Of a DNA stretch of 64,000 nucleotides, positions 1,385-58,570 are shown piece after piece. The position numbers and the translations under genes were made by a program. The stretch's first letter is position 1. Each line of letters begins with the position of its first letter. The DNA comes from Octopus sinensis (lineage: Eukaryota), in NCBI RefSeq assembly GCF_006345805.1, contig NW_021833800.1, positions 1-64,000 of the forward strand. Reading direction: 5' to 3'. The notes beneath the pieces were generated by a model. The model worked only from the letters and a program-made list of their open reading frames with translations. It was not told where the DNA came from and did not search any database.

Positions 1385-1617
1385 GGCGGTGAGTTGGCAG
1401 AATCGTTAACATGCCGGGCGAAATGCTTAGCGGTATTTCGTCTGCCGCTACGTTCCGAGTTCAAATTCCGTCGAGGTCGACTTTGCCTTTCATCCTTTCG
1501 GGGTCGATAAATTAAGTACCAGTTACGCACTGGGGTCGATGCAATCGACTTTAATACCTTTGTCTATCCTTGTTTGTCCCCTCTATGCTTAGCCCCTTGT
1601 GGGTAATAAAGAAATAA
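1385..1617 (+). mobile_element. tRNA-derived SINE, family B, long tail
   Basis: Box A TGGCAGAATCG, box B GAGTTCAAATTCC, core gcctttcatcctttcggggtcgataaattaagtaccag, tail ...agccccttgtgggtaataaagaaata. Confidence 0.9.
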
Positions 1618-2833: not shown

Positions 2834-3050
2834 ATGGTGAGCTGGCAGAATGGTTAGAACGCCAGGCGAAATGCTTAGCGGGTATTTCGTCTGCCGTTAC
2901 GTTCTGAGTTCAAATTCCGCCCGGGTCGACTTTGCCTTTCATCCTATCGGGGTCGATAAGTACCAGTTACGCACTGGGGTCGATGTAATCGACTGAATCT
3001 CTTTGTCTGTCCCCCTCTATGTTTAGCCCCTTGTGGGCAATAAATAAATA
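2834..3050 (+). mobile_element. SINE family B, long tail
   Basis: Same head, core and tail as 1385-1617, with small deletions. Confidence 0.88.
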
Positions 3051-3433: not shown

Positions 3434-3850
3434 ATTCTTTTCTACTCTAGGCACAATACCCCAAAGTTGTTTTTTATTAAGGGGGGGGGGGGGGGCAGTC
3501 GATTAGATCGACACCCCAGTATGCAACTGGTACTTAATTTATCGACCCCGAAAAGGATGAAAGGCAATGTCGACCTCGGCGGAATTTGAACTCAGAACGT
3601 AGCGGCAGACGAAATACCTATTTCTTTACTACCCACAAGGGGCTAAATACAGAGGAAGCAAACAAGGACAGACAAACGGATTAATTCGATTATATCGATC
3701 CCAGTGCGTAACTGGTACTTATTTAATCGACCCCGAAAGGATGAAAGGCAAAGTCGACCTCGGCGGAATTTGAACTCAGAACGTAGAAACCGACAAAGTA
3801 CCGCTAAGCATTTCACTCGGCGTGCTAACAACTCTGCCAGCTTGCCGCCT
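3434..3850 (-). mobile_element. Nested SINE B: long-tail copy (3618-3850) joined to short-tail copy (3434-3617)
   Basis: In element orientation the long tail ends gaaatag and runs directly into gtatttcgtctgcc, the internal SINE-B sequence of the second copy. Confidence 0.85.
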
Positions 3851-6223: not shown

Positions 6224-6258
<35 letters not shown>

Positions 6259-7987: not shown

Positions 7988-8464
7988 GTCACCATATACA
8001 CGCACGCGCGCGCACGCACACAGTAATAATAGCTTTGAAATAGAACTCAAGTTTTATGTACACGATATCGAGCTCCATCGAGTTCGTGTCTTCAGCAGGT
8101 TGTCTTGCTGCTGTTTGCCATACAATGACCGACGTTAACATATGAGAAAAACTTGCCAAAAAACTTGGTCCCTGGGTCAATGTAAATATTGTGGTTGGGG
8201 CGTAACACAGGTGAACACAATACTGCGTTACGTCCCTTGAAATGTCAGAAGATATTACGCCCGCACAAATATTGAAACCCAAGGGCGGCAATTCAGATCC
8301 ACGTAGACATGGGCTGCGTTCCTTGTGTTGCTAAGATGGGTCGCTGCAGTATCTATGAAGGTTTATGTTGGAAATGTGCCTGTGTTGATGTATCTTGTGT
8401 ACAGTGCAGCAAGAAAGAAATTGTAAGTTGTTGCTTCATAGATGAGCTGATACACATATCTAGC

Positions 8465-8510
<46 letters not shown>

Positions 8511-8726
8511 ATATAGCGGCGTTTAGAGGTGGTGAATTTGAGATATAGGGAAGGTTGAAGCGAGAAAAAAGTCGGAAAAGGAGGATGTGACATCTGAATA
8601 TGTCTAGTGTTGGGTGGCGCTGCTAATGAGGCATTGATGTGACTTTCCAGTTGGACAGGATGACAGGATGAATCTTTCCGCGTCGACACAGATAGTGAAT
8701 ATCTCCGTTCTTGTCTTTATATATAA

Positions 8727-9120
8727 CTAGCAGTATCGCTCGGCGTTTCTCTTTGTAAGGGAAATAACTATAGAAGCATTTTTAGAGATGTAAAGTATAA
8801 TAGCCATCTCAATATGGCTAACCACAAAGGTGGGGTGTTACTGAAGCTTTTTACGTTCTGAGATTTAATAATAAATTTTTAGAGAGTTACTTCCCTTATA
8901 TATGCCAAAAAATGCATTAAAAATAGGAAAAATTGATGGTAAATTATTTTTAAAATCGTAGACTCATCGTAGACGCGCGCTAATACCCAGAAGGGCTCGA
9001 TATGAATCACGACTATAAGATACCCGGTTTTGGTTAAACTGCACCGCAAAATGTGGGAGTAGTTAGGAATCTAAATCGTAGGAGACAGACAGCACACAAC
9101 TTCACTTTTATATATAAAGA
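8727..9120 (-). mobile_element. Non-autonomous Helitron (394 bp)
   Basis: Minus strand reads A|TC...CTAG|T (canonical termini at an AT site) with a GC-rich subterminal palindrome cgccgagcg. No TIR or TSD. Confidence 0.8.
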
Positions 9121-9441
9121 TTATCTGAGTTATTTGTTTGAAGCAAGATGTGCTTTCTTTCTCCCATGAAAAGACGGGATTTTCTCGAATCATTTATGTA
9201 AAACTTTGCTCTTTTGTGGATCCGCATTTAACGAAGGAGCTTATGTTTCGATTTATCATTTTTCAAGTGTTCTGGAGTTTTTTTTATTTTGTTATTGGTG
9301 CATCCTGGATGACGTGTGGTTGCAAACCATTTTCGTCTCCTCATACAAGTCTCTTTAACTTTCGTAATCGATCGACTGGTTCAACATGGCTGAGATGACT
9401 TCAGCTTCATAAGCTACCGACTTAATGTTGTATGTCTGATC

Positions 9442-9627
9442 CAGTGCTTTTCAAACCTTTTGCTAGAGCGGAACCCCAAGGAAACATTCCACTGGCTCGA
9501 GGAACCCCTATGCAATAATTTAATAGTCTTATGTACACATATCTGCACAGGAGACTTAAAAATTACTGCCGATTTTAGCAGTTTTGTAACTTCTTGCAGA
9601 AACCCTGGACTGTACTGGCGGAACCCT
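9442..9627. mobile_element. hAT-like MITE fragment
   Basis: Begins cagtgcttttcaaacctttt with repeated ggaaccc subterminal motifs. The right terminus is missing. Confidence 0.45.
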
Positions 9628-10329
9628 AATTACTCCAGCAGAAACGTCTGACTAGTTTGGGATGGCTTGTTTGGTGGGTTTGCTTGAGATGATTATTTTC
9701 ATATTGGCGCAGCATATCTTCCCTGAGTGAAGATTCTTTTTGTATGTCTATGATGGCCAGGGAAATATTTACCTTGCAGGGCCTAACAAGTTTTTTTCTT
9801 TTTTCTTAAATTGCTCTTAAAAGAGAAAATGGGGCGCAAAGCATATAATCTTTCTGAGCCTGTTTCTAGTTTCTGATTGTGTGTTGTGCTGGGTGTATGA
9901 AACACTTTTTACTAGAAGCTGCAATCTGCTACAGCCTCATTGTAGCAAGGAACCGCTCTATCGAAAACTTCTTTGGAAGAGACGCAGTTAGACTTCCATA
10001 CTATTATCATACTAATAGTTACTGTAAGATTTTAAAACATAATAAGTGGTCTTTGCAGGAATACCTGTTTATGTATCTAAAGTGTTTCATAAAGTTTATG
10101 AAAGGGTTTGTAAGCATTGGAATTTAGGTATAGGAAAGCATGCAGAAAATCAGCTTCGGTTAAGTTCATTGCTACCCTAATCTTAAGTGCTAATCTTTGG
10201 AAACAGTTCTGAGATTTTTCTGAAGGTATCTAAGAGGAAGCTTTGATACCGTTATTCCTTTGAAAAGAGAAAAGAAAGTTACTGGTTGACTCCACCAATC
10301 CGTTTTCAATTTCCGGCTAAGTCCATCGT

Positions 10330-10450
10330 GTATATATATATAGTATATATATATATATATATATAATATATATATATATATTATATATTATATATATATA
10401 TATATATGTATATGTATGTATATGTATATATATATGTATATGGATGTAGG

Positions 10451-10498
<48 letters not shown>

Positions 10499-10734
10499 GG
10501 TATATATATATATATGTATATATATATAAATATATATATATATATTATATAATATATATATATATATATAGGTATATGTATGTATATGTATTATATATGT
10601 ATATGTATGTATGTATATATATATATATATGTATATATATAATAATATATATAGTATATGTATATATATATATATAGTATATATAGATATATATATATAT
10701 ACATATATATATGTATATAATAAATATATGTATA

Positions 10735-10765
<31 letters not shown>

Positions 10766-10915
10766 TAATATATATATGTAATATAAATATATATATATAG
10801 TATATATAAATATATATATATATATGTATATATAAATATATATATTATATATGTATATATATAAATATATGTATATATATATGTATATATAAATATATGT
10901 ATATATATATGTATG

Positions 10916-10950
<35 letters not shown>

Positions 10951-10957
10951 GTATGTA
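10330..10957. repeat. Compound (TA)n/(TATG)n microsatellite
   Basis: Direct inspection. Accounts for the Y/I-rich ORFs in the track. Confidence 0.95.
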
Positions 10958-11090
10958 TGGAAAGAAGAGATGTATTCCCACGCAGGAAAAAATATAGAAT
11001 TTGTTTGAAAAGGCACATGAATTTGAAAAACTTGAAGTTGTTTTCAAATATATTTATACACGCACACACACGTGCACGCACGCACACACA

Positions 11091-11124
<34 letters not shown>

Positions 11125-11773
11125 ATGCATGCGCTCGTAAAACCTTGTCTTCGACAAAAAGTCAGACTAGATCGGAAAATATGGATCCATTCTCAATGAG
11201 TTCATGGATTCTCTTGACGGTGCTGGCATATGTGATCCAATAGGCCTGTCCTTGTTAGACGCTTGCTAAAATTAAACATTCCTTGATCACAAATGCTGGG
11301 TTATCCCGAGGCGATGGATTAGCCCGCATCACACAGCAGCTGCTATGGCGACGGTCTAAATAGGTGTGTGTTGGTTTTTGAATGTTACGTTTTGATATCG
11401 CTGTGTGATTGATTATCTCTCTGTTTATTTTGATATCATTATGTGATTGGTTTGTTTACTGAAGCTGTGATAACAAGGCTGGTGGTTGTATGGAATAGGT
11501 TGGTTGGATGAGAGGAGATTGACAACAATAACAATAACAACAACAACAACAACAACAATATCAATATCAGGATTAGCAAAGAGGAAACAAGAAAAAGAAC
11601 AAAATGTACAAAATAAATTGTTATTTATATATATATATTCATACGCACACACATATATATTTGGGCATATACACATTTGCAGTCACATATATGTATATAT
11701 ACACACACACACAATATACATATAATATATATAATATATATATATGAATGAATATATTATATATATACATATA

Positions 11774-11839
<66 letters not shown>

Positions 11840-15478: not shown

Positions 15479-16611
15479 CGTGACATCCTCTGGAAGGTCA
15501 TGCAGGCAGATGGTATCCCACCTAAACTTCTCAATCTTATCAAAACTTATTACCGCTCAACAAGATCCCGCGTACACGTGTATGGTGAAGTGTCGGAACC
15601 CTTCGAAATATGGTCTGGCGTTCGGCAAGGATGTGTTCTTTCGCCAACTCTTTTCAATTACGCCATCGACTGGATCACCACAAATGCATTAAGGGAGTCC
15701 CCCGGTATCACTGTTGGTCACAACTTTTCCGTCAAGGATCTAGACTACGCAGATGACATTGCGATACTTGGCGAAACATTTGCTGACGTCCAGTTTGCTA
15801 TCAATGAGCTCCAGCGTGTTGCATCGCAGATTGGTATGAAAGTCAATGCTTCGAAGACCAAAATCCTCACAGCCGGCTTTGCCCCACCAGACAAAACACC
15901 CATTGTCCTCAATGGGGATATTCTTGAAGAGGTTGAGAGTTTCAAATACCTTGGCGCCATCATTACAGCTACAGGTCAAGGTGAGGCTGACATTAAAACA
16001 CGAATCGACCTCGCTCGCCAAGCCTTCAACGGACTCAGTGCACGACTCTAGTCAAGATCTGAGATCCGACGCACCACCAAAGTACGGATCTACCAAGCAC
16101 TAGAGCGAACGATTCCCCTTTACGGCAACGAGTCATGGCCGATGACGGTGGAAGATATTAAGCGACTAGAATTCTTCGATCACCTCTGTCTACGCCACAT
16201 CCTTCGTGTCCGATGGCATCACTTTGTCTCCAACAATTCGGTGCGACACCAGTGCAGAATCACCTCCCTCCGACAAGTCATCCTAACGAGATGTCTACGT
16301 TGGCTGGGTCATGCCCTCCGTCGTCAACCAGGAGAATTCATCTACGAAGCAATTGCTCCAGCTCCCCTTCAGGGTTGGCGAAAACGATGTGGTGGACAAC
16401 GAAAAACCTGGCTGATGACAGTCAAGGCTGATCTGGAACCCAACCTAGACCCCCATATCTACGGCGTTCGTCGCTGGAATAAGGAGTGGTTGGAGATCAC
16501 GCGGTCGTTAGACTCAAATCGCCAGGCCTGGTCGGCGTTTGTGAGAGATGCAGCATTGAGGATGAATGAATCCAGCTCAACCCACCTCGGGTGAATGCTG
16601 TCTCAAGTCAA
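15479..16611 (+). mobile_element. 5'-truncated RTE-clade LINE (RT and C-terminus, one nonsense codon)
   Basis: GVRQGCVLSPTLF, DLDYADDIA and FKYLGAII motifs. ORFs 15500-16051 and 16142-16594 are in one frame, separated only by the TAG at 16049-16051. tcaagtcaa tail. TSD gaatagat at 15471-15478 and 16612-16619. Confidence 0.92.
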
Positions 16612-18122: not shown

Positions 18123-18754
18123 CTTATCAGATTGTCTTTCCATCCATCCATTTATTTGCCGGTCTGTCTGTCTGTTTTCTGTCTCACACTTTCTCAGCGT
18201 TGTCTCGCTCTGTCACGTTTTTTACGAAGCCGTGTCTTCTAGCACGAACGTATGCACGTACGTACACGCACACACATGCTCTCTCTCACACACACACACA
18301 CTCGTTACGTTGTTATACATATTCCCTCTCTAGCACTTTCTGAAGTGCCGCCACCATCGCCAACCCAGCCATTCCACCACCGTAAACAGAACCTAATCTC
18401 CTTAAACCCTGGCTAGATTCGAACCAAGTCTCCCGGGGGTTCCACCTTTTCCGTTACGTCTAATTTTTGCTGCTTTCTCAGATCTTCAAATTGTTCTACT
18501 CCAGTTTTTGTAGCTTTCTACGTTATTCAAGTCACACACGCACACACACACACACACACACACTCACTCACGCACGCACGTACGCATGCGCGCGCGCACA
18601 CAATACAAGCGCGCACGCGCACATAAACATTACACACACGCGCACACGCAAACTCACATACGGAAGACAAAACGTGACACACAACTACGTGCGTATAGAC
18701 ATTCATGCATACAAACATACACAAAAGCCGGCATACACACATACATACACAATA

Positions 18755-19285
18755 TATTTCTTTACTACCCACAAGGGGCTAAACAGAGAGGGGACAAACA
18801 AGGACAGACAAACGGATTAAGTCGATTACATCGACCCCAGTGCGTAACTGGTACTTATTTAAAGGCGGCGAGTTGGCAGACACGTTAGCACGCCGGGCGA
18901 AATGCTTAGCGGTATTTCGTCTGCGTTACGTTCTGAATTCAAATTCCGCCGAGGTCGACTTTGCCTTTCATCCCTTCGGGGTCGATAAATTAAGTACTAG
19001 TTAAGTACTAGGGTCGATATAATTGCCTTAATCCGTTTGTCTGTCCTTGTTTGTCCCCTCTGTGTTTAGCCCCTTGTGGGCAGTAAAGAAATAGGTACTT
19101 ATTTAATCGACCTCGAAAGGATGAAAGGCAAAGTCGAACTCGGCGGAATTTTTTGCCTTTCATCCTTTCGGGGTCGATTAAATAAGTACCAGTTACGCAC
19201 TGGGGTCGATGTAATCGACTTAATCCCTTTGTCTGTCCTTGTTTGTCCCCTCTATGTTTAGCCCATTGTGGGTAGTAAAGAAATA
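18755..19285. mobile_element. Two head-to-head SINE B 3' halves (fold-back), left arm interrupted by another SINE
   Basis: Left arm 18755-18862 plus 19107-19132 (minus) and right arm 19152-19285 (plus), with a 19-nt loop at 19133-19151. Confidence 0.85.
18863..19093 (+). mobile_element. Full-length SINE B (long tail) inserted in another SINE B
   Basis: 13-bp TSD ggtacttatttaa at 18850-18862 and 19094-19106. Confidence 0.92.
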
Positions 19286-19324
19286 TATTGTGTATGTATG
19301 TGTGTATGTTTGTATACACAATAT

Positions 19325-22573: not shown

Positions 22574-23026
22574 CTCACACACACACACACTTACACACAC
22601 ACACACACACACATACGCACACACACACATGCACACACACACACGCACACACACACACACGCACACTTACACACACACACATACGTGTATATATGTATTT
22701 ATATACACATAAATAAATATATATATATACATACACACACTTATACACACATATATACGTGTATACACACACACACGAGCACAGACACACACACACGCAT
22801 ACACATATATACATACATACATATATACATACATACATACATACATGCATACATACATACATACATACATACATACATGCATACATACATACATACATAC
22901 ATACATACATACATACATACATGCATACATACATACATACATACATACATACATACATACATACATACATACATGCATACATACATACATACATACATAC
23001 ATACATACATACATACATGCATATAT

Positions 23027-23057
<31 letters not shown>

Positions 23058-23095
23058 CATACATACATACATACATACATGCATACATACATGCA

Positions 23096-23129
<34 letters not shown>

Positions 23130-24030
23130 CATACATACATACATGCATACATACATACATACATACATGCATACATACATAACATACATAATACATACAT
23201 ACATACATACATACATACATACATACATGCATACATACATACATACATACATACATACATACATACATACATACATACATACATGCATACATACATACAT
23301 ACATACATACATACATACATACATACATACATGCATACATACATACATACATACATACATACATACATACATACATACATACATGCATACATACATACAT
23401 ACATACATACATACATACATACATGCATATATATACATACATACATACATACATACACATATACATACATACATACATACATACATGCATACATACATGC
23501 ATACATACATACATACATACATACATACATACATACATACATACATACATACATACATACATGCATACATACATACATACATACATGCATACATACATAC
23601 ATACATACATACATACATACATGCATACATACATACATACATATATACATACATACATACATACATACATACATACATGCATACATACATACATACATAC
23701 ATACATGCATACATACATACATACATACATACATACATACATACATACATACATACATACATACATACATACATACATGCATACATACATGAATACATAC
23801 ATACATACATGCACATATACATACACACATACATGCATATATACATACATACATACATGCATACATACATACATGCATACATACATGAATACATACATAC
23901 ATACATGCATATATACATACATACATACATGCATATATACATACATACATACATGCATACATGCATACATACATACATACATACATACATACATACATAC
24001 ATGCATACATACATACATACACGGATGGAC
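22574..24030. repeat. (CA)n then ~1.2 kb (CATA)n array with TGCA variants
   Basis: Direct inspection. Source of the 300-515 aa MYVC/HTYI pseudo-ORFs. Confidence 0.97.
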
Positions 24031-24335
24031 GGACATATGAACACAACATGCATATATGTTACATATACATTCATTAACATATAAACACACATGAACACAT
24101 GCCATACATATATCCTATACACATATATACATCAAATTTATTCGTAATTACACGAGGGATAAAGTATTTTGTTGAGAAAGTCTTAGACAAGCTGACTCCA
24201 AATATTAGTTGGCCTTGATTCAACCGGATGTAGCGTAGAGAATACGATTGAAAACGAGGCACCGGAAGTGTAATTTGCTGCGCTTGTTTGTTTGGAGGGG
24301 ACAAGATTGGTAAGCACAATAATAATAATAATAAT

Positions 24336-24366
<31 letters not shown>

Positions 24367-24388
24367 ATAATAATAATAATAATAATAA

Positions 24389-24459
<71 letters not shown>

Positions 24460-24476
24460 ATAACAACAACAACAAC

Positions 24477-24509
<33 letters not shown>

Positions 24510-24512
<3 letters not shown>

Positions 24513-24714
24513 TTATTTATTGCCCACAAGGGGCTAAACATACAGGAGACAAACAAGGACGGACATAGGTATTAAGTCGATTACATCGACCCCAGTGCGT
24601 AACTGGTACTTAATTTATCGACCCTGAAAGGATGAAAGGCAAAGTCGACCTCGGCGGAATTTGAACTCAGAACGTAACGGCAGACGAAATACCGCTAAGC
24701 ATTTCGCCCGGCGT
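24510..24714 (-). mobile_element. SINE family B, long tail, head truncated
   Basis: tttattgcccacaaggggctaaac...gcatttcgcccggcgtg. Confidence 0.88.
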
Positions 24715-25923: not shown

Positions 25924-27170
25924 CGAGGGACGTTCAATAAGTAATGCCTCTGACCCACTTCCAGGTGTTTGATCTAGTTGAAATTTTGCATGTGCAATTA
26001 CTTATATCTCTATAGATTAGGTGGCAAATTACAGCTCTGAACTAATTATGGTTTCTGTTGAGTGTCGAGCAGTGATCGGTTTTTGTATTTGAAAGGACGC
26101 ACACCATGGGAGACTTTTGATGAAATGAAAGTAACTTATGGTGATGATGTCCCATCATATGACCTTGTAAAACGCTGGCATCGTGAATTCAAACATGGTC
26201 GGAACTCTGTGGAAACAGCTCCCAGATCTGGTCGACCCCCTTCTGCCATTGATGAGGCATCTGTCCGTCAAGTTGAGGGTGCCATTTTGGAATATCGACG
26301 CATAACTTTTCGCCAAATAGCCCATGAGGTCAAGATTAGTACCGGGTCAGTGGAAACTATCATTCATGACCATTTGCATATGCAAAAGGTGTCTGCCAGA
26401 TGGATTCCCAGGTTGCTCACGCCTTTCCAGAAGCAAGAACGCGTCGATTGCTCGAGGATGAATTTGGAGACGTACCAAGAAGATGAGTCAAACTTTTTCA
26501 AAAGACTGATTACACAGGATGAAACCTGGGTCCATCACTATGATCCAGAGACCAAAGCCCAGCCAATGCAGTGGAAGAACCGTGACTCACCTCCTCCAAA
26601 GAAGGCAAGGGTGTAGCCCTCTGCTGGCAAGGTCATGCTCACAGTCTTCTGGGACCAGGACGGAGTAGTGATGACAGATTTCCTGGCAAAGGGTACCACA
26701 ATTACAGGAGCCTATTATGCTTCACTTTTGAGGAAATTAAGAGAAGCTATCAAAATCCAGAGGCGGGGCAAGATCAGCGAAGGCATCCTCCTCCTGCAAG
26801 ACAACGCTCCGGTCCACAACTCGCGTGTCGCCAGATCAGAAGCACAGGCGTGCGGCTATGAACTCCTACCCCACCCCCTACTCTCCTGACCTTGCACCCT
26901 CTGATTTTCACCTCTTCCTAGCCATGAAGTTGTTTTTGAAAGGAAAGCATTTCCCAGATGATGCAGCCTTGATTTCTGAAGTCACGTCGTGGATGGCGGA
27001 CCAAGCTGGGGTCTTCTACAAAAACGGTCTCCAGAGCTGGATCAAACGATTGGAGAAATGCGTAACTCTGGATGGTTTCTATGTAGAAAAAGACCAATAA
27101 CTGTGCCAAGTTCCATTGCTCTACTGGTATGGGAAGTGGGTCAGGGGCATTACTTATTGAACGCCCCTCG
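25924..27170 (+). mobile_element. Complete mariner (Tc1/mariner) DNA transposon, 1247 bp
   Basis: 39-bp TIRs at 25924-25962 and 27132-27170 (37/39 match), TA duplicated at both ends, transposase inside. Confidence 0.95.
26062..27100 (+). pseudogene. Mariner D,D34D transposase
   Basis: WIPRLL, TQDETWVHHYDPE, LQDNAPVH and (P)YSPDLAPSD motifs, with 34 residues between the 2nd and 3rd Asp. Lesions: no start codon, TAG at 26614-26616, 1-nt frameshift near 26875. Confidence 0.92.
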
Positions 27171-27796: not shown

Positions 27797-28028
27797 ATTT
27801 CTTTATTGCCCACTAGGGGCTAAACACAGAGAGGACAAACAAGGACAGGCAAACGGATCAAGTCGATTACATCGACCCCAGTGCGCAACTGGTACTTAAT
27901 TTATCGACCCCAGGAGGATGAAAGCCAAAGTCGACCTCGGCTGAATTTGAACTCAGAACGGAACGGCAGACGAAATACGGCTACGCATTTCGTCCGGCGT
28001 GCTAACGATTCTGCCAGCTCGCAGCCTT
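27797..28028 (-). mobile_element. SINE family B, long tail, variant subfamily
   Basis: Diagnostic bases (caggaggatgaaagccaaag, gcagccttg, ggatcaagtcg) are shared with the copy at 50236-50476. Confidence 0.88.
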
Positions 28029-30758: not shown

Positions 30759-31268
30759 ATGTTTCTTTATTAGCCACACAGGGCTGCACACAGACAGAAC
30801 AAATTACAAGGTAGAGCTTTTCTTTTGGGGGTAAAAAAAGGGGGTTGGTTTTCGATCAAAAGGGATCGTAAAAGGAAAGAAAGAGGACAAAAAAGGGGAG
30901 GATTTAAAAAAAAAGGTGGGGGAGAGGGAAAAAAAAGAAAAGGGGAGAGGAAAAAAAAGTTGATCAATAGGGATCGTAATCACAGTAATGTCAATATGAA
31001 GTGTAAAGGGGAGGACAGGTGAGGTTTACCCGTGGAAGGAAAGCCTACGGAAAAGACCACGGTAACCTCGGTCAATGAAGTCACATGTTATACTTCTTTT
31101 TTTTTTTGCAAATAAGCAACTCTCTGTATTAATTTTTACGGTTCATAGAATCATAGTCAAAGTGGCTTCGTCATTCATACGTGCCATCCTTGCTACATTC
31201 ACCCATCTTTTTTTAAAACATTCACTAGACAAAACTTGCCTCTCTACTCTCACTTTCCTCTTCAAGTG
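30759..31268 (-). mobile_element. 5'-truncated Tx1-clade LINE (end of ORF2 plus 3'UTR), sister subfamily
   Basis: Collinear with 31301-31810. 11-bp TSD tctgcatagat at 30748-30758 and 31278-31288. Confidence 0.9.
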
Positions 31269-31685
31269 ATACTATCTTCTGCATAGATAGATAGATAGAT
31301 ATGTTTCTTTATTAGCCACACAGGGCTGCACACAGATAGAACAAATTACAAGGTAGAGCTTTTCTTTTGAAGGTTTAAAAAAAAAAAAAAAAAAAAAGGA
31401 AGGGGGAGTTTCGATCAAAAGGGATCGTAAAAGGAGAGAAAGAGGACAAAAAAGGGGGGTTAAAAAAAAGGGGGGAGAGGAAAAGAAAAAAATTGATCAA
31501 TAGGGATCGTTATCACAGAATGTCAATATGAAGTGTAAAGGGGAGGACAGGTGAGGTTTACCCGTGGAAAGAAAAGCCTACGGAAAAGACCACGGTAACC
31601 TCGGTCAATGAAGTCACATTTTATATTCTTTTTTTTTCTTTTTTTTTTTTGCAAATAAGCAACTCTCTGTTTTCGATTTCTGGGT

Positions 31686-34600
31686 TCATAGGACTATGCT
31701 CAAGGTGGCTTCGTCATTCATACGTGCCATTTTGCTACATTCACCCATCTTTTTTTAAAACATTCGCTAGACAAAACTTGCCTCTCTACTCTCACTTTCC
31801 TTTTCAAGTGGTACTTGAAGAAGTTGATGAGAGATTGACCAGAGAGGAAATGTTTGTCTCTAATCCTTTCAGGCGCGTCCACCAGATACATTCTTTCGCC
31901 ATAGCCACAAGGATGATGAAAATAGCTCTTCCTTCCCGTTTGAAGGAAGGAGGCGTGACAATATTGACGATAGACTCAGCTGATAAACCGACTCGTCCCA
32001 CACGTGACAGCAGTTGTTCGACATAAGCCCACAGGTCGGAAATTGTTGGACACTGAACGAGTGCGTGCAGAACGGTTTCGTCGCTCTGACCGCATCTCGG
32101 GCAGGTCGGCCCCGTGTTTCTCGAGCCGTGTCTGTAGAGCTTATCCCGAACGGGTAGCGCTTCTCGGTAGCACTGCCAGGCCAGGGATCTCTGGAAGTTG
32201 TCCATGGGCCCTGGCCCGAAAGTCGTCCTGAACAGGCGGGTCAGGTACTCCTCGTCGACGTCCAGGTTCGCCCCGAGCTCGTCGTCGTACCTCCCCTCCA
32301 CTAAACCCCTATAGAATGCTTTGGTGGTGTGTTGAAGTCACTTAAGGTCGACCCAGGACGGCAGAGTTGCTTGAGAGCAACGCGACACTCGCGGTGCCAT
32401 TCGCCCTTCCTCGGCCTCTTTTTGATCCACGACTGCAGTTCGGTCATGGAGACGAGCTGCGGGAAAGCGTGCCTCACAAACAGCGACCACACCTGTTCAC
32501 CGTCGTCTACATAGAGCCAGAGATGTCGCAGTCTCAGCGCGTGTTGCGCATCATCAACCACGGCATGCCCAGCCCTCCTTTTAACGGGTGTTGACAGCAA
32601 ATGGATCGCCTGACCATCGGACGCATCCTTTCCACAAGAAGCGAAAGAGGATGCGTTGTAGTTTGGTGATGGTAGGGTCGGGACAAGGTACGACGGTCAG
32701 GCGGTAGTAGTAGATGACGGACGCGATGTACGTTTTCGCCACCTCCGCTCGACCTTTTAGGGACAGTTTCCTCTCGGCCCATTGCCGGGCGAGAGTAACC
32801 ACCCTACTCGTTATCTCGTTCCAGTTCTTCTCCACTTGGAGGTCCGGACCAAACCAGACCCCGAGCAACTCAACCGGGCCGTCGGTCCAGCGTCCCACGA
32901 CGGAGGCGCTGGTGGACGGCATGGGCTTGCTTCTCCAGGTGCCTAGTCGCAAGCCCACTGACTTTTCCCGGTTGATTTTCGCTCCTGTCACCGCTTCGTA
33001 GTTTTTCAGTGTCTCGCCGACCAGCTCGATGTGCTCGTGGTTAGACACTATGACGGTGACGTCGTCCGCGTATGCAGACACGCTCGTCCCGCATCCCAAT
33101 TCTCGCGGGATGCCCCTTAGAGTCGCCAGCTTCCGCAGTAGTGGCTCAAGAGTCAATACGTATAGAAGCGCCGAGAGGGGGCATCCCTGACGGACCGAAC
33201 GTGCAATGTCGAAAGGTCTCGATAGATGTCCATTTACGCGAATTACCGAACGGATGCCTCTGTACAAGGCAGCTATCCAGCCGCGGAAGACGGGACCGAA
33301 ACCAGCCGCTCTCAGGACTGCCTCCAAGTATCGATGGTCTACCCTATCAAAGGCTTTCGATTGATCCAAGTTGATCAGGGCCCCACCCATGCCAGGTTCG
33401 TTAACTACCCTGTCTATGATGTAGCGCATCAGATGGAGGTTGTCATGGATGGTCCGGCCTGGCACGGCGCATGTTTGCGCCTTGTCGACCAGTTTCTCGA
33501 TGACAAGCGCCAACCTCTTGGCTAGCACCTTGGCCAAAATTTTCAAGTCTGCATTAAGCAGAGTGATTGGCCTAAAGTTATCTATAATGTTTCCCTTGTT
33601 GAGATCTTTCTTCAGCAGTGTTACAGCTCCTCGGCTCAAAAAACCGGGTATGCTCCCGTTTTGCTGCCAGTTGCAGTATACCGCCGCCAAGACGTCTCCA
33701 AACAAGTCTGGCATACAATAGTAAAATTCGTAGGGTAGGGTAGACCATCCAAACCCGGTGATTTGTCCCTCGAGCATTCTGCCATCGCTTCCCGCACTTC
33801 CGCCGCCGTGATGGCACCTTCGCAGCACCCTGCCTTTCTTGTCGAGAGTCGTGGTAGGCTATGTAGGTAGGCACTGAAGTCCACCCTACGTTCTTGCCCT
33901 CCACTCGTTCCGAACAGTCGGGCAAAATGCTGCTGAAAGGCCTCACACATTTTACTTGGCTCGAGCAATTCGCGCCCCTGTTCATCTACCAGTGACCGAA
34001 TGGTGACGTTGTTGCCCTGTTGCGCCTCTTCCACCCGGGCCTCTCTCGCGGCTCCAACACCTTCGTTCCTTAGAGCACGCATCCTAGCTCTGACAGCACA
34101 TCCTTCGTGTTTGGCGTTGAAGTGTTGGTCGAGGGCCAACCTCGCCGCCAAAACGTCGGATGCGATGCCGCTTCTAATTGCCTCTTCTAGCTTCTTAACT
34201 AGCTCACCTCTACTCTATTTCTATCTATGGCTAGTGCTTTGCTGTACCCAATTGCTTCTGCTTTTACTGCTCTCTTGAGGGCAAATACCATTTGTTGTTG
34301 ATGATGGCTCCCGTCAAAGCCCTCTTTACTAATGTGCTAATCCGGTCTCTGAAAACTTGTCTCGATGGAAAGACGCGTTTAGTTTCCAGTATCCGGGACC
34401 CTGCCTAAGTGTCTTAACTAAGTCTAGCGTACATGTCACAAGTTTGTGATCCGTGTAGCTGACTATGTGGAATTGTGGACATCCTATGCTATCTCTATCT
34501 ACTGTCCTACACAGTATCCTATCTAGATACGATCTCGACGACCGATGCGGTTGCTCCATGTCCACGTTGGCGCATTCGGGTGGTCTAGTCGGAACCTGTC

Positions 34601-35123
34601 AGACAGTTGAAAGCGTCTGAGCAGGTCTCTGAGGCATTTGCATCCCCGTCTATTCCTATCTCTACCCACGTAGTCTACATGCGTGTCCAAGGTAGCATTC
34701 CAATCCCCCACTAAGAGTAAAGGACGAGACGTTCCCAAGAAAACTTCTAGACGTTGAAAGAAATCCGCCGACCTGTTAAGGGCGGTGCGTAAACTGATAC
34801 GAGTCGAAAAGCGCACCCATTGCTGCCGTCGAGATCCAGACGACCAGTCTACCCTCCGGGTCTACGAATATTGTCCTTACTTTGAGATCCAGACTCTTGT
34901 GAAAAAGTACCGCGGTGCCACTACCGCCCATTCTCGGCAGACAGGGGGGAAAATAAATGTTGAACTGTCCGCCAAACATGGTCTTTAGGGCTCGCGGATT
35001 GTGGAGTCTGGTCTCGCTTATGGCTATGATTTCTAACTTATGTGACTTTATGTCATTTAAGAGGTACCCTTGTTTCCAAGGGGGCCCCAAGCCACGTGCA
35101 TTTACACAACCAATCTTGATCAT
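31686..35123 (-). pseudogene. Tx1-type ORF2: APE endonuclease, reverse transcriptase, C-terminal zinc finger (frameshifted)
   Basis: KIGCVNARGL, IAISETRL, LLLVGDWNATLD, SYLDRIL, YTDHKLV, GPGYWKLNAS, KSPGLDG, NFRPITLLNADLKILAKVLAKRL, LDQSKAFDRVDH, VRQGCPLS, AYADD, CPRCGQSDETVLHALVQC. Split over several frames by small indels. Confidence 0.93.
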
Positions 35124-35154
35124 AGTTCTAATGAATTAGAATACAGAGGGTTAC

Positions 35155-37140
35155 TTACTGCTCGAAAGTTTTTGCTTTCTCCTCGAGAAGATCCCAGTAC
35201 AGTTTCTTTGTGAGATATTTTTGGCATTTACCAACCGCACTGGGGAAAATGCCTTTGAGTGTGTGGTGCAGACTTTTGGAGATGTGTAATATTTGGATGT
35301 GTCTGTGTGGTGTTGTGTATGGGTGATTGTTTGTTTTTATGTCATCTTCTGTATGTTTGTTTTTGATTGGATGTATTCCATCAAATTTGTGTTTTTGGTG
35401 TCTATGGCTGTGAGCATGTTTGCTGTATATGTTTTGTGGTGTTGGTGTGGCTGTTGTTTGCGTTGGGTTTTGAAATGTCTTCGGGAGATGTATTTCCCCC
35501 TGCTTTGTTCGTGTTTGCATTTGGTTTGGTTGTGTTTCTGCTCTTTATTTTCCTCTTTTTTGTAGCTATTTGCCATTCCTCACTGGTTTCGTCTTCCGAC
35601 GAAATTTCTGAGGAATCAGAAGGGGGTAGGGGTATGTTGTGGGCTTCTATGTATGTCTGTGTAAGTGGTTGTGTTGTTGTTTTCGTTGTTGTGGTTGTTG
35701 AGTGTTTGTGTGTGTTGAGTGCGGTATATAGGGATGGGGGATCAGTTGTGTGTTGTTTCTTGGTTTTTCTGTTCCTTTGGGTTTTGCTGTTGTTGGTGGT
35801 GTTGGTATTTTTTCAGGTGTTGAGTGGTTTTTGGTTGATGACGGATTAGCTTGGTGTGCTTCTCTTGTCGTCTTCTGTGTTGATGGTGGTGTGGGTAGTA
35901 GAGCTTTTTTTCCGGAGTGCTTTGGGTTGTGGTAGTGGTTGTTGTTGTTGCTCTTGGTGTGCAGTGGTGGGCACGTCTTTTTCAAGTGTGTTTCGCTTCC
36001 ACACAAATAGCAGCGGGTCGCCTGCCCTCTACCACTATATAGAGTTTGTAGCCTCCTGGCAGTTCTATAGCGGTGGGTATCTTCTCTCTTGCTGCTTCAT
36101 CCAATTGAAGCAGGAATTCGATTGATTTGCCCACATAGTCTTTCTCTCCTAGAACCGCGATTTCCAGGATGTTTGTCTCTGACATTGTCTCTGACATTTC
36201 AAAGCAGATGGCAGAGACAACCATTGTGTTTCGACATCAAATGGTATGTTTTTTATTTGGACTTTCGTGACCCTTTTGTTTAAATAGACTGGTATCATTA
36301 CCAAGTCGTCCGAATGCAGCTCCAATGTGGAAAAACGTTTTGCTAAACTTTCGTTGAGGAAACGTACTTGGACTGTACCAAATTTGTTTCCCCAACTGAT
36401 ATATTCCTTGGAGTCCCATGCAGGACGAAGGCATTTTTCGATTTTTTCCTGCGGTGCATTTTCTGTTCTTCTTGTTTTTTTTGTTTATTACTTTATAAAT
36501 TATTGTTTTTTTTGGTTGTTTTCCACGATGTGTTGTGGAATGTGAAGGTGCAATTTGTCTCCTTCTTTGGAGAAGAGTGCCTTTGTGCGGTTTATCTCTG
36601 TGTGGTGAATGTTACAATTGTTCTTTTTTTTTTGTTACGTCCGCAAAACATCGTTTTGAATTTGGCAGTAGAAGTGTAATTGTGGCAGTGTTAATTGAAG
36701 TCATGGTAGGTAGTGGTGTTGGTGTTGGCGGTATTAGCAGCAGAAGGCTTGGATGTAGCATTTGACGTCGTAGTAGTGGTGTTGGTGTTGGCGGTGTTGT
36801 GTCTTTGGTAGGCGGCTTTGTGCCAATTCGTTGTTGTTGTTGGTGGTGATGGTGGTGGTGCTGGCATTCAATGTTTTCGTTTGTATTCATTTTTGAAATC
36901 CCTTCTCTGTCCCTTTATCATCAACAAGTGGTGTGGGGAGTGAGGGGAAATCTAAGTTAATGTCTTTGGTCGCGGCGATGGTGAATGCGACGTTAGATTT
37001 GTTGTTGTTGTTGTTGGTGGTGGTGATGGTGGGTGACAGCGGTGTTCACGCTGCGATGTGTTAGCAGCTAGTGGTAGCAATAGTGTTTTGCTACCGTTCT
37101 GCATGACTGGCGGGCTAGCCACGTGGTTTCTAGTTGCCAT
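35155..37140 (-). pseudogene. ORF1 (gag-like, single CCHC zinc knuckle, Thr/Pro-rich linkers; frameshifted)
   Basis: ATG at 37140. CYLCGSETHLKKTC (CX2CX4HX4C) at 36012-35971. Stop at 35155, just upstream of ORF2. Confidence 0.8.
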
Positions 37141-37899: not shown

Positions 37900-38167
37900 G
37901 TAGGTAAGTAGGTAGGTAGGTAGGTAGGTAGGTAGATAGATAGATAAATAGACAGAGACAGATAGACAGACAAACAAACAGGTAAATAGATAGATAGATT
38001 GAAGGATAGATAGATAGATAGATACATAATACATACATACATACATACATACATACATACATACATACATACATACATACATGGATAGACACATATGTTT
38101 CTTTATTAGCCACGCAGGGCTGCACACAGACAGGACAAAATTACAAGGTAGAGCTTTTCTTTTGGGG

Positions 38168-43645: not shown

Positions 43646-43878
43646 CTATTTCTTTACAACCCACAAGGGGCTAAACACAGAGAGGACAAACAAGGACAGG
43701 CAAACGGATTAAGTCGATTATATCGACCCCAGTGCGTAACTGGTACTTATTTAATCGACCCCGAAAGGATGAAAGGCAAAGTCGACCTCGGCGGAATTTG
43801 AACTCAGAACGTAACTGCAGAGGAAATACCACTAAGCATTTCGCCCGGCGTGCTAACGTCTCTGCCAGCTCGCCGCCT
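43646..43878 (-). mobile_element. SINE family B, long tail, full length
   Basis: Complete head and tail. 3' flank reads gaaatag|gtatata, and ggtatat also occurs at the 5' flank (possible decayed TSD). Confidence 0.9.
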
Positions 43879-45433: not shown

Positions 45434-45695
45434 ACTTGAGTTCAAATTCCGCCGAGGAATCCTTTTGGGGTCGATAAATTAAGTAACAGTTGCGTACCGG
45501 AGTCGATCTAATCGATTAGACCCCGCCCCCAAAATTTCGGGCCTTGTGCCAAGAAAAGAATATTTAGAAATCATTCGAGTTGGCAGAATCATTAGAGCGC
45601 CGGGAAAATGTTTGCTTCGTATTATGAGTTCAAATCCTACCGTGGTTAAATTTGCTTTCCATCCTTTCAGGATCGATAAAATAAAGTACCAATGA
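45434..45695 (+). mobile_element. Rearranged SINE family B short-tail pieces
   Basis: Core and short tail at 45434-45560, followed by a degenerate head/core at 45577-45695. Confidence 0.65.
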
Positions 45696-50235: not shown

Positions 50236-50550
50236 CAAGGCTGCGAGCTGGCAGAATCGTTAGCACGCCGGACGAAATGTGTAGCCGTATTTCGTCTGCC
50301 GTTACGTTCTGAGTTCAAATTCCGCCGAGGTCGACTTTGGCTTTCATCCTCCTGGGGTCGATAAATTAAGTACCAGTTGCGCACTGGGGTCGATGTAATC
50401 GACTTGATCCGTTTGTCTGTCCTTGTTTGTCCCTTCTGTGTGTAACCCCTTGGGGGTAGTAAAGAAATAGAAATAGGTATTTCGTCTGCCGATCAAATCG
50501 ACTGTCCTCCTCCCCTCAAAATTTCGGGCCTTGTGCCTAGAACACAAAAG
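50236..50550 (+). mobile_element. SINE B long-tail copy (50236-50476) fused to a short-tail remnant (50477-50550)
   Basis: Junction gaaatag|gtatttcgtctgcc, the same as at 3617/3618. Confidence 0.85.
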
Positions 50551-58359: not shown

Positions 58360-58570
58360 CGTTAGCACGCCCGGCGAAATGCTTAGCAGTATTTCGTCTG
58401 CCGTTACGTTGTGAGTTCAAATTCCGCCGAGGTCGACTTTACCTTTCATCCTTTCGGGGTCGATAAATTAAGTACCAGTTACGCACTGGGATTGTTGTAA
58501 TCGACTTAATACCTATGTCTGTCCTTGTTTGTCCCCTCTATGTTTAGCCCCTTGTGGGTAATAAAGAAAT
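58360..58570 (+). mobile_element. 5'-truncated SINE family B, long tail
   Basis: 10-bp TSD aggtattaga at 58350-58359 and 58571-58580. Confidence 0.9.

What the first reader, a model, noticed from the sequence alone, without database searches (positions are those of the whole stretch)
19050..19091. SINE tail matches the 3' end of the Tx1-clade LINE, including a conserved hairpin before AATAAA
Seen: SINE B long tail tttgtcccctctgtgtttagccccttgtgggca(a/g)taaagaaa aligns without gaps to the LINE 3' end tttgtcctgtctgtgtgcagccctgcgtggctaataaagaaa (reverse complement within 38095-38167), 32-33 of 42 identical, with ccttgt also shared just upstream. Both fold a small hairpin immediately 5' of the terminal A-rich motif (SINE GCCC-cttgt-GGGC; LINE AGCC-ctg(t/c)gt-GGCT). 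Established: SINEs borrow LINE 3' stem-loops for recognition by stringent LINEs (L2, CR1, RTE), whereas mammalian L1 recognises only poly(A). To my knowledge, tail-sharing SINE partners of Tx1-clade LINEs are rarely reported. Inference: a high-copy SINE is mobilised by a Tx1 family that recognises a structured 3' end. The true partner is probably a sister family of the element here, since identity is below 80% and the target differs.
Basis: partly seen in the sequence, partly recalled or inferred. Interest (0 to 1): 0.8.

Follow-up and report, generated by a model that had tools for sequence, protein, structure and literature searches.

The report
Octopod SINE shares Tx1-type LINE tail
An abundant short retrotransposon (SINE) in this octopod genome ends in the same roughly 50-base, hairpin-bearing tail as a Tx1-type LINE in the same window, the usual sign that a SINE hijacks that LINE's copying enzyme; I found no published tail-sharing pair for this LINE group.

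Summary
The 42-nt SINE tail at 19050-19091 matches the three LINE 3' ends in the window (31304-31345, 30762-30803, 38098-38139, minus strand) at 32-33 of 42 positions without gaps. Apart from the SINE copies and these LINE tails, no position on either strand exceeds 25/42.

The LINE is an L1-superfamily element with an endonuclease, a reverse transcriptase and a zf-RVT domain. It sits at (CTAT)n microsatellites. Its RT is 40% identical to a fish element inserted in U2 snRNA genes (Keno-type Tx1) and 26% identical to human L1.

Related LINE tails from Argonauta hians and other samples carry the same module: a U/G-rich stretch, a 4-bp GC hairpin, then AATAAAGAAA. An Argonauta tRNA-type SINE shares 46/53 tail positions with a LINE-3'UTR-derived unit in that genome.

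The hairpin stem changes in a compensatory way (pair 2 is G-C, C-G or A-U), but its folding energy is no better than that of shuffled sequence.

Mobilisation itself is inferred, not shown. I judge this a new member of a known kind, a stringent-type SINE/LINE pair in the Tx1 clade. Interest is moderate.

The parts
18863..19093 (+). Full-length copy of the SINE ('SINE B') that carries the finding. It has a tRNA-like head with A-box-like TGGCAGA at 18874 and B-box-like TTCAAATTCC at 18938, a body, and a LINE-like tail of about 50 nt.
   Evidence: A 13-bp TSD, GGTACTTATTTAA, flanks it at 18850-18862 and 19094-19106. ARAGORN and Rfam do not call a tRNA.
19050..19091 (+). The 42-nt SINE tail of the finding: a U/G-rich stretch, the hairpin GCCC-CTTGT-GGGC (19069-19081) and AGTAAAGAAA.
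1573..1614 (+). SINE B tail, another copy (SINE at 1386-1616).
3007..3048 (+). SINE B tail, another copy.
3621..3662 (-). SINE B tail, another copy. It is followed directly by a partial SINE starting at GGTATTTCG.
18757..18798 (-). SINE B tail. It forms one arm of a 131-nt inverted duplication.
19242..19283 (+). SINE B tail. It forms the other arm of the inverted duplication.
24512..24553 (-). SINE B tail, 5'-truncated copy. Its 3' end abuts an (AAT)n array of about 195 bp.
27798..27839 (-). SINE B tail, full-length copy.
43649..43690 (-). SINE B tail, full-length copy with TSD GGTATAT.
50426..50467 (+). SINE B tail. Its stem has A-U at pair 1.
58528..58569 (+). SINE B tail, 5'-truncated copy with TSD TAGGTATTAG.
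31304..36420 (-). Degenerate Tx1-type LINE. ORF1 remnant with a CCHC knuckle at about 36420-36000; endonuclease around 35123-34776; RT at 33828-32581; zf-RVT at 32301-31804; 3'UTR at about 31690-31304. ORF2 is split over all three reading frames.
31304..31345 (-). 3' tail of the LINE (hairpin AGCC-CTGTGT-GGCT at 31314-31327), followed by CATAT(CTAT)4.
30762..31275 (-). Second, 5'-truncated LINE copy in tandem, covering the end of ORF2, the 3'UTR and the tail (30762-30803). It is flanked by the 9-bp TSD CTATGCAGA at 31278-31286 and 30748-30756.
38098..38167 (-). Solo LINE 3' end of about 70 nt (tail at 38098-38139), embedded in (CTAT)n/(GTAT)n microsatellite.
45437..45562 (+). 'SINE A': the same body as SINE B but a different tail, CCCCGCCCCCAAAATTTCGGGCCTTGTGCCAAGAAAAGAA. 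That tail resembles the 3'UTR of a second, more distant LINE lineage, which points to tail swapping.

Best explanation
The window comes from an octopod genome. It holds a tRNA-type SINE of about 230 nt, with about a dozen copies in 64 kb. The last 50 or so nucleotides of the SINE were derived from the 3' end of a Tx1-type (L1-superfamily) LINE lineage.

That lineage ends without poly(A). Its terminal module is a U/G-rich stretch (..TCTGTGT..), a 4-bp G+C-rich hairpin with a 4-6-nt loop (mostly CTTGT), and then AATAAAGAAA plus a few bases.

The most likely mechanism is the 'stringent' one known from L2, CR1 and RTE LINEs. The LINE's ORF2 protein recognises this terminal module on its own RNA and starts target-primed reverse transcription there. 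SINE RNA carrying the same module is taken as a template in trans.

The degenerate LINE in the window targets (CTAT)n and is a relative of the real mobiliser, not the mobiliser itself. A sister family with a closer tail and a different target preference is the likelier partner.

Shown here: the homology, its terminal position, its conservation across LINE families and across several SINE families in two octopod genera, compensatory stem changes, the absence of poly(A), and TSD-flanked SINE insertions.

Inferred: binding of ORF2p to the module, the role of the hairpin as opposed to the primary sequence, and trans-mobilisation.
For: Tail match: 33/42 ungapped against a background maximum of 25/42 over both strands. 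Local alignment z is 9-10 against dinucleotide shuffles.

The tail is the true LINE terminus. It ends a body with endonuclease, RT and zf-RVT domains. It recurs at the end of a tandem truncated copy and of a solo 3' fragment.

The same module ends related LINEs elsewhere:
- Argonauta hians L001, 6213-6294 and 6579-6660.
- L003, 1948-2029.
- Argonauta L006, 7120-7201 and 740-850.
- L009, 1301-1332.

The L006 family matches the octopod SINE tail best: score 32, z 10.7, 43/52 columns, 36/41 over the last 41.

A pair exists within one genome. The tail of an Argonauta tRNA-type SINE matches 46/53 positions of the tail of a LINE-3'UTR-derived unit.

Hairpin evidence:
- All 11 SINE B copies, the three window LINE tails and 3 of the 4 other LINE tails tabulated there form 4 of 4 stem pairs.
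- On 41 model-aligned tails, 92% of cells pair, against 81.3 +/- 1.9 in shuffles (0/500).
- The covariation score is 0.369 against 0.196 (0/500), and the slid controls reach at most 64.6%.
- Pair 2 is G-C x19, C-G x11, A-U x1. Pair 1 is G-U x24, G-C x10, A-U x2.

No SINE or LINE copy ends in poly(A). The SINE copies are real retrotranspositions with TSDs. A covariance-model scan finds the module in the window only on SINE B, the three LINE tails and, weakly, SINE A.

Clade: RT is 40% identical (233 bits) to a U2-snRNA-inserted fish element, 26% (130 bits) to human L1 and 30% (98 bits) to a plant L1.
Against: - The in-window LINE is dead, with ORF2 spread over three frames, and its tail is only 79% identical to the SINE tail.
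- Targets differ. All three LINE copies sit at (CTAT)n. None of the 11 SINE copies does; the three SINE copies with readable TSDs all start at GGTA. A sequence-specific endonuclease should give SINE and LINE the same target.
- The best-matching LINE tail comes from another genus, Argonauta. No equally close LINE family was recovered from the window's own species.
- The hairpin has only 4 bp. Its predicted stability is not better than shuffled sequence (z from -0.01 to -1.9).
- The 11 C-G cells at pair 2 all come from one SINE family, so they represent one evolutionary event.
- The model-based alignment leans towards the structure it was built on.
- No experiment supports mobilisation.
Confidence: 0.7

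Rival explanations
1. The tail is shared and is used for mobilisation, but recognition is by primary sequence. Either the conserved TCTGTGT...AATAAAGAAA is read directly, or the A-rich end anneals to the nicked target. The small hairpin would then be incidental.
For: The loop CTTGT and the flanking TCTGTGT and AATAAAGAAA are more conserved than the stem bases. The hairpin folding energy is not better than that of shuffles. The MFE structures also pair UCUGUGU with AAUAAAGA, so the local fold is ambiguous.
Against: The stem bases vary while pairing is kept: pair 2 is G-C, C-G or A-U, and pair 1 is G-C, G-U or A-U. There are at least two independent double changes, one in SINE B and one in the L006 817-850 LINE copy. 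Loop length varies from 4 to 6 nt, yet the stem stays directly before the A-rich motif.
Confidence: 0.3
2. The SINE is mobilised by a LINE of another clade that is not present in this window. The Tx1-type LINE merely shares an old or recombined tail with it.
For: SINE and in-window LINE differ in target site. Octopus genomes hold active RTE, CR1 and Dong-R4 LINEs besides L1-Tx1 (PMC13282606). Two other RT fragments lie in the window, at 15500-16051 and 49198-49695.
Against: Every LINE seen carrying the module belongs to this one lineage, across four independent sources. Nothing else in the window matches the tail. Several unrelated SINE heads carry tails of this lineage.
Confidence: 0.1
3. The direction is reversed and there is no partnership. 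The LINE lineage picked up a SINE fragment at its 3' end, for instance through a SINE insertion next to a master copy.
For: The similarity is short, about 50 nt. SINEs are far more numerous than LINEs here.
Against: The module is the terminal part of continuous 3'UTR homology in LINE families that are only 61-69% identical in protein, and it is found in two genera. No SINE body sequence accompanies it. SINEs with different heads and bodies carry it, while all the LINEs that carry it are related. Even if the direction were reversed, a tail retained at the LINE terminus for that long would still be the sequence its RT starts on.
Confidence: 0.07
4. The match is a chance resemblance of low-complexity, T/G-rich sequence ending in a polyadenylation-like AATAAA.
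For: The region is compositionally simple, and AATAAA is a common motif.
Against: The background maximum is 25/42, against 33/42 observed three times. Shuffle z is 9-10. The match is anchored at both elements' exact 3' ends and recurs in independent genomes.
Confidence: 0.01

Closest known systems
UnaL2 / UnaSINE1 of the eel (L2 clade; Kajikawa and Okada 2002, as cited in PMC3747384 and PMC4494074)
   Same: A tRNA-type SINE and a LINE share a short 3' tail containing a conserved stem-loop. There is no dependence on poly(A). This is the model for 'stringent' recognition.
   Different: The LINE clade differs (L2 against Tx1/L1 superfamily). UnaL2 ends in a short tandem repeat. Its mobilisation of the SINE was shown experimentally, which is not the case here.
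Maize/sorghum ZmSINE2 and ZmSINE3 with LINE1-1_ZM, and Chlamydomonas SINEX-3_CR with L1-1_CR (PMC3472496, PMC3747384)
   Same: These are SINEs whose tails come from L1-clade LINEs with a conserved 3' stem-loop. [quoted passage not shown]
   Different: They are from plants and a green alga, not an animal, and from the L1 branch proper, not the Tx1 branch. Those elements end in poly(A) or T-runs.
SINEU and Tx1-Mar of crocodilians (Kojima 2015, PMC4494074)
   Same: A SINE proposed to be mobilised by Tx1-clade LINEs.
   Different: The link there is a shared insertion target (a Mariner transposon). No LINE sharing the SINEU-1 3' end could be found, and SINEU has poly(A). Here the link is a shared, structured 3' tail, and the targets of the SINE and the in-window LINE differ.
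Microsatellite- and gene-specific Tx1 elements: Kibi (TC)n, Koshi (TTC)n, crocodilian (TTCC)n families, and Keno in U2 snRNA genes (Kojima and Fujiwara 2004, as cited in PMC4494074)
   Same: The window LINE and its relatives sit at microsatellites, (CTAT)n and (ATT)n, and form head-to-tail tandems. Their RT groups with a U2-specific element.
   Different: The target repeats differ. No SINE partner was described for those families.

Membership tests
SINE/LINE tail-sharing pair (stringent-type partnership) | The 3' terminal sequence of the SINE is homologous to the 3' terminal sequence of a LINE of the same genome. | tested here: met
   33/42 ungapped against a background maximum of 25/42. Shuffle z is 9-10. 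The LINE tail terminates a body with endonuclease, RT and zf-RVT domains.
SINE/LINE tail-sharing pair (stringent-type partnership) | The homology is confined to the tail and lies at the exact 3' ends. The rest of the SINE is unrelated to the LINE. | tested here: met
   The alignment covers only the last 50-55 nt. blastn of the whole SINE against the window hits only SINE copies and fragments.
SINE/LINE tail-sharing pair (stringent-type partnership) | The SINE has a Pol III-type head derived from a small RNA gene (tRNA A and B boxes). | tested here: inconclusive
   A-box-like TGGCAGA at 18874 and B-box-like TTCAAATTCC at 18938 are seen by eye. ARAGORN and Rfam call no tRNA. The Argonauta SINE with the same tail has a clearer tRNA-like head, GCTCAATTGGTAGAGCG ... 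GGTTCAATCCC.
SINE/LINE tail-sharing pair (stringent-type partnership) | A conserved stem-loop lies in the shared tail. | tested here: met
   A 4-bp stem sits directly 5' of the A-rich motif in the SINE and in five LINE tail types. 92% of cells pair against 81% in shuffles (0/500), with compensatory changes at 2 of 4 pairs. Caveats: folding z is only -0.01 to -1.9, and the alignment was fitted to the model.
SINE/LINE tail-sharing pair (stringent-type partnership) | The elements end without a poly(A) tail, so the end is not L1-like or 'relaxed'. | tested here: met
   All 11 SINE copies end in AAAGAAATA followed by flank. The LINE copies end in AAAGAAACATAT followed by (CTAT)n.
SINE/LINE tail-sharing pair (stringent-type partnership) | The LINE protein mobilises the SINE in trans through the tail. 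| not testable with these tools
   This needs a retrotransposition assay.
Tx1 clade of non-LTR retrotransposons | ORF2 has an APE-type endonuclease, an RT and a C-terminal Cys/His motif (L1-superfamily architecture). | tested here: met
   Pfam: Exo_endo_phos (E 8e-05, below the curated cut-off), RVT_1 (1.4e-31) and zf-RVT (1.8e-08). The best solved structure is human L1 ORF2p at E 1e-31, against R2 at 1e-16.
Tx1 clade of non-LTR retrotransposons | The RT groups with Tx1 elements and not with L1 proper. | tested here: met
   Tested by proxy, because no curated Tx1 reference was available. A fish relative (P0239) lies inside a U2 snRNA gene of a U2/U5 array with a 17-bp TSD, which is Keno-type behaviour. 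The window RT is 40% identical (233 bits) to it, 26% (130 bits) to human L1 and 30% (98 bits) to a plant L1. A small NJ tree separates the L1s from the cephalopod, limpet, coral and fish group. The literature classes molluscan L1-like LINEs as Tx1 or L1-Tx1 (PMC10294476, PMC13282606). The tree has few taxa and no outgroup.
Tx1 clade of non-LTR retrotransposons | Sequence-specific insertion into microsatellites, multicopy genes or transposons (true of many but not all members). | tested here: met
   All 3 window copies abut (CTAT)n, and two stand in head-to-tail tandem with TSD CTATGCAGA. Sister families end at (ATT)n.
Tx1 clade of non-LTR retrotransposons | ORF1 has RNA-binding domain(s) plus a CCHC zinc knuckle. 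| tested here: inconclusive
   A knuckle, CYLCGSETHLKKTC, is readable, but Pfam zf-CCHC reaches only E 0.29 and there is no RBD hit on the decayed ORF1. The fish relative's ORF1 has the ZCCHC3-type RBDs plus zf-CCHC.
L1-type 'relaxed' SINE mobilisation (Alu/B1-like, poly(A) recognition) | SINE and LINE share only a 3' poly(A) tract. | tested here: not met
   There is no poly(A) on either element, and they share 50 nt of specific sequence.

The most novel reading that the evidence does not exclude
The Tx1-type LINE lineage of octopods is a stringent-type LINE whose hairpin-bearing 3' module has been captured repeatedly by several SINE families: SINE B and, with a second tail type, SINE A in the window, plus at least two tRNA-type SINEs in Argonauta. 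On this reading it is a main engine of the octopod-specific SINE expansion. It would be the first animal SINE/LINE tail partnership in the L1/Tx1 superfamily, and it would show that structured 3'-end recognition is retained on the Tx1 branch although mammalian L1 has lost it.
Probability: 0.45. Interest if true: 0.65.

Novelty: new member of a known kind. Interest (0 to 1): 0.5.

Why it matters
SINEs make up roughly a tenth of octopus genomes (11.6% in O. vulgaris, PMC13282606) and are the largest share of their repeats (PMC8967140). In those papers most of them are left unclassified, and I found no LINE partner named for them. Tying a major SINE to the L1-Tx1 lineage names a candidate driver of the octopod SINE expansion.

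The finding also bears on an open question about the L1 superfamily: was specific 3'-end recognition ancestral and later relaxed in mammals and most plants (Ohshima 2012, 2013)? Until now only three plant and algal pairs supported that view. A Tx1-branch example in an animal would add an independent data point.

It would also offer a compact RNA element of about 35 nt for testing how an L1-like ORF2 protein recognises its template.

Tried and rejected
- Two scans of the JGI metagenome contigs, one with a profile of the ORF2 C-terminus and one with the SINE tail as a DNA pattern, found nothing. That collection evidently holds no octopod DNA.
- Several short contigs fetched for extra LINE tails were of no use. 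L004 ends at the stop codon. L011 is interrupted. L010, L007 and L008 are too short. L013 is the same family as the window LINE but is cut just before the hairpin.
- Names in the protein collections never said 'Tx1', so I tested the clade through the U2-inserted fish relative instead.
- ARAGORN and Rfam do not recognise the SINE head as a tRNA.
- The plain MAFFT alignment of the tails (A2) misplaces the loop indel. I did not use it for pair counts and used a covariance-model alignment instead.
- I considered and dropped a link between SINE B and (ATT)n microsatellites. Four copies abut such arrays on one side, but (ATT)n is very common in this window, so the association is not informative.
- An outer helix pairing UCUGUGU with AAUAAAGA appears in most MFE folds. 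Its bases hardly vary, so nothing can be said for or against it.
Full report
**What is at the coordinates.** It is the end of a SINE copy of about 230 nt at 18863-19093. That copy is flanked by a perfect 13-bp target-site duplication, GGTACTTATTTAA, at 18850-18862 and 19094-19106, so it is a genuine retrotransposed insertion.

blastn of this copy against the window finds about a dozen copies or large fragments that are 82-92% identical. Eleven of them retain the tail. A consensus shows three parts:
- a head with A-box-like and B-box-like motifs;
- a body, ...GGGGTCGATAAATTAAGTACCAGTTACGCACTGGGGTCGATGTAATCGAC...;
- the tail, ...CCTTGTTTGTCCCCTCT(A/G)TGTTTAGCCCCTTGTGGG(T/C)A(A/G)TAAAGAAATA.

ARAGORN and Rfam do not call the head a tRNA. 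Its tRNA origin therefore rests on the box motifs alone.

**The LINE.** The 'LINE 3' end' at 38098-38139 (-) is only a solo fragment of about 70 nt embedded in (CTAT)n. The same tail occurs twice more, at 31304-31345 and 30762-30803 (-).

The copy at 31304 terminates a LINE body on the minus strand:
- an ORF1 remnant with a CCHC knuckle, at about 36420-36000;
- an APE-type endonuclease (Pfam Exo_endo_phos, 35123-34776);
- a reverse transcriptase (RVT_1, E 1.4e-31, 33828-32581);
- a zf-RVT Cys/His domain (E 1.8e-08, 32301-31804).

ORF2 is broken over all three frames, so this copy is dead. A 3'UTR of about 390 nt leads to the tail, which is followed by CATAT(CTAT)4. Immediately downstream lies a second, 5'-truncated copy (end of ORF2, 3'UTR and tail), flanked by the 9-bp duplication CTATGCAGA. 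A head-to-tail tandem at a microsatellite is what a sequence-specific LINE produces.

**Is the match more than chance?** I slid the 42-mer over both strands of the window. Background scores stop at 25/42. The only higher values are the 11 SINE copies (36-41) and the three LINE tails (33). Local alignment of the last 70 nt scores 24-25, against 8.5 +/- 1.7 for dinucleotide shuffles of the LINE tail. Both sequences are the exact 3' ends of their elements, so there is essentially no search space.

**Which clade is the LINE?** The nearest proteins are from Argonauta hians (67% identity), unnamed octopod-like fragments in metagenome assemblies (75-78%) and a cuttlefish (52%). The window is therefore octopod DNA. 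The closest solved structure is human L1 ORF2p (E 1e-31, against R2 at 1e-16), which places the element in the L1 superfamily.

No curated Tx1 reference was available, and database names were uninformative, so I used a behavioural proxy. One of the closest non-molluscan relatives (P0239, Coilia grayii) lies inside a U2 snRNA gene of a U2/U5 tandem array, with a 17-bp duplication of U2 sequence. That is the defining habit of Keno, a Tx1-clade family (PMC4494074).

The window RT compares as follows:
- 40% identical (233 bits) to the U2-inserted fish element;
- 26% identical (130 bits) to human L1;
- 30% identical (98 bits) to a plant L1.

A small NJ tree puts the two L1s apart from the cephalopod, limpet, coral and fish group. 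Published repeat annotations class molluscan L1-like LINEs as Tx1 or L1-Tx1, including 13 recently active families in O. vulgaris (PMC10294476, PMC13282606). I accept 'Tx1-type', with the caveat that the tree is small and unrooted.

**The tail in related LINEs.** I fetched DNA around relatives of ORF2 and read their 3' ends. All carry the same terminal module.
- Argonauta L001...TTCTGTGTCAGCCAGGTGGCTAAGAAAGAAAT. A second, 3'UTR-derived unit in the same locus ends ...TTCTGTGTCGGCCCTTGTGGCTAATAAAGAAATC.
- L003...GTTTCCGGGCCCTTGTGGCCAATAAAAGAAATC(ATT)n.
- Argonauta L006...GTCCCCTCTATGTTTTTGCCCTTGTGGCTAATAAAAGAAATA(ATT)n. A second copy in that locus has the stem GACC/GGTC.
- L009...TGTGTTCAGTCCTGGTGGCCAATAAAGAAATC.

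The L006 family matches the octopod SINE tail better than the in-window LINE does. It scores 32 (z 10.7), with 43/52 columns identical, and 36/41 over the terminal part, including 15 identical bases GTCCCCTCTATGTTT.

**More SINEs with the module.** In the Argonauta loci the covariance model built from the module finds many further tails. They belong to an Argonauta relative of SINE B (L006 11990-12226) and to a distinct, clearly tRNA-like SINE of about 150 nt that occurs three times in tandem at L006 900-1360. The tail of the latter, TTCTGTGTTCGGCCCTTGTGGCTAATAGAGAAATCTATTT, matches 46/53 positions of the tail of the LINE-3'UTR-derived unit in L001. That is a near-identical SINE/LINE tail pair within one genome.

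In the window itself a second SINE type ('SINE A', 45437-45562, with a remnant at 50479-50550) has the same body as SINE B but a different tail, CCCCGCCCCCAAAATTTCGGGCCTTGTGCCAAGAAAAG. This tail resembles the 3'UTR of a more distant LINE lineage of the same group (L005 and L002, about 54% RT identity; z 7.1). Tails have therefore been swapped between SINEs, and the donors seen so far all belong to this LINE group.

**The hairpin.** With the stem anchored directly before the A-rich motif, all 11 SINE B copies, the three window LINE tails and three of the four other LINE tails tabulated form four of four pairs, with loops of 4-6 nt. That comes from the one-base difference in loop length, not from non-homology.

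On the 41 model-aligned tails:
- 92% of cells pair, against 81.3 +/- 1.9 in shuffles (0/500);
- the covariation score is 0.369 against 0.196 (0/500);
- sliding the partner columns drops pairing to 65% or less.

Pair 2 is G-C in most LINEs, C-G in SINE B and A-U in one LINE copy. Pair 1 is G-U, G-C or A-U.

There are weaknesses. The stem has only four pairs. Predicted stability is no better than that of shuffles (z from -0.01 to -1.9). The 11 C-G cells represent one event. The alignment leans towards the model, and it misplaces the 6-nt-loop LINE tails, which lowers the pairing figure rather than raising it. I regard the hairpin as probable but not proven. MFE folds also pair UCUGUGU with AAUAAAGA around the hairpin, but those bases do not vary, so that outer helix cannot be tested.

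**Targets.** Three SINE B copies have readable duplications, and all three start at GGTA: GGTACTTATTTAA, (TA)GGTATTAG and GGTATAT. Two more copies are followed by GGTATTTCG, which is a site inside the SINE itself. The window LINE family sits at (CTAT)n in 3 of 3 copies, and the L003/L006 families at (ATT)n. The in-window LINE is therefore unlikely to be the mobiliser. This is the main point against a simple one-to-one pairing and in favour of a sister family.

**Mechanism.** The anatomy fits the stringent model established for L2, CR1 and RTE-type LINEs (PMC3747384). In that model ORF2p recognises the terminal module on LINE RNA and starts target-primed reverse transcription there, and SINE RNA with the same module is used in trans. 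Neither element has poly(A). About half of the SINE copies carry AGTAAAG instead of AATAAAG, so a polyadenylation signal is not what is being conserved in the SINE. Binding and mobilisation are inferences.

[quoted passage not shown] Its table of 58 pairs contains no mollusc (PMC3472496; PMC3747384). The one published SINE-Tx1 link, SINEU with Tx1-Mar in crocodilians, rests on a shared target, and that paper states that no LINE sharing the SINEU-1 3' end was found (PMC4494074). The recent octopus repeat papers I searched leave most SINEs unclassified, and I found no LINE partner named for them (PMC13282606, PMC8967140). I could not consult Repbase or Dfam, where such a pair might already be noted.

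**Verdict.** This is the familiar SINE/LINE tail-sharing relationship in a LINE clade and an animal group where I found no earlier report of it. I judge it a new member of a known kind, of moderate interest.

Noticed in passing
window 45437-45562 and 50479-50550 (+): A second SINE type ('SINE A') shares its body with SINE B but has a different tail, ...CCCCCAAAATTTCGGGCCTTGTGCC(A/T)AGAA... The tail has a 3-bp version of the hairpin (GGC-CTTGT-GCC) and resembles the 3'UTR of a more distant LINE lineage (L005 7374-7404, L002 6877-6906; z 7.1 and 5.1). This suggests a second SINE/LINE tail relationship and tail swapping.
   Followed up: partly
L001 6300-6660 (Argonauta hians): A tRNA-SINE-like head is followed by about 230 nt homologous to the whole LINE 3'UTR and then the tail. 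This could be a long SINE variant, or a snapshot of tail capture. Only one copy was seen.
   Followed up: partly
L006 900-1360 (Argonauta hians): Three head-to-tail copies of a tRNA-like SINE of about 150 nt lie next to an (ATT)n-terminated LINE tail. Tandem SINE arrays suggest repeated insertion at the same site.
   Followed up: no
window 18732-18862 and 19178-19308: A 131-nt inverted duplication, 98% complementary, comprises a SINE 3' part plus its flank. The full SINE of the finding and a further SINE fragment (19095-19151) lie between the arms. This is a local palindromic rearrangement.
   Followed up: partly
window 3502-3851 and 50239-50550: At two loci a full SINE B is followed directly by a partial SINE starting at the same internal position (GGTATTTCGTCTGCC), with (TTA)n upstream. 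This is either repeated insertion at an internal GGTA site or a retrotransposed dimeric element.
   Followed up: no
L012 (Coilia grayii) 6246-11794: A full-length Tx1-type LINE with poly(A) is inserted in a U2 snRNA gene of a U2/U5 tandem array, with the 17-bp TSD ATCTGTTCTTATCAGTT. Several further copies are annotated along the array. This is Keno-like behaviour.
   Followed up: partly
window 41131-41553 (+) and 26062-26616 (+): Mariner/Tc1-type transposase fragments: Pfam Transposase_1 (E 1e-26) and the Mos1 HTH_48 domain.
   Followed up: no
window 15500-16051 (+) and 49198-49695 (-): Two further reverse-transcriptase fragments (RVT_1, E 4e-19 and 2e-04) from other retroelements. I did not determine their clades. 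Neither has the tail module nearby.
   Followed up: no
window 22803-24021, 24318-24512, 37375-38327 and 45846-51437: Very long microsatellites: (ACAT)n of about 1.2 kb, which produces spurious ORFs in all six frames; (AAT)65; (CTAT)n clusters; and many (ATT)n arrays.
   Followed up: partly
Patella caerulea cluster of P0207: More than ten nearly identical ORF2 genes of 1153 aa carry consecutive locus tags on one contig. This suggests a tandem array of a Tx1-type LINE in a limpet.
   Followed up: no
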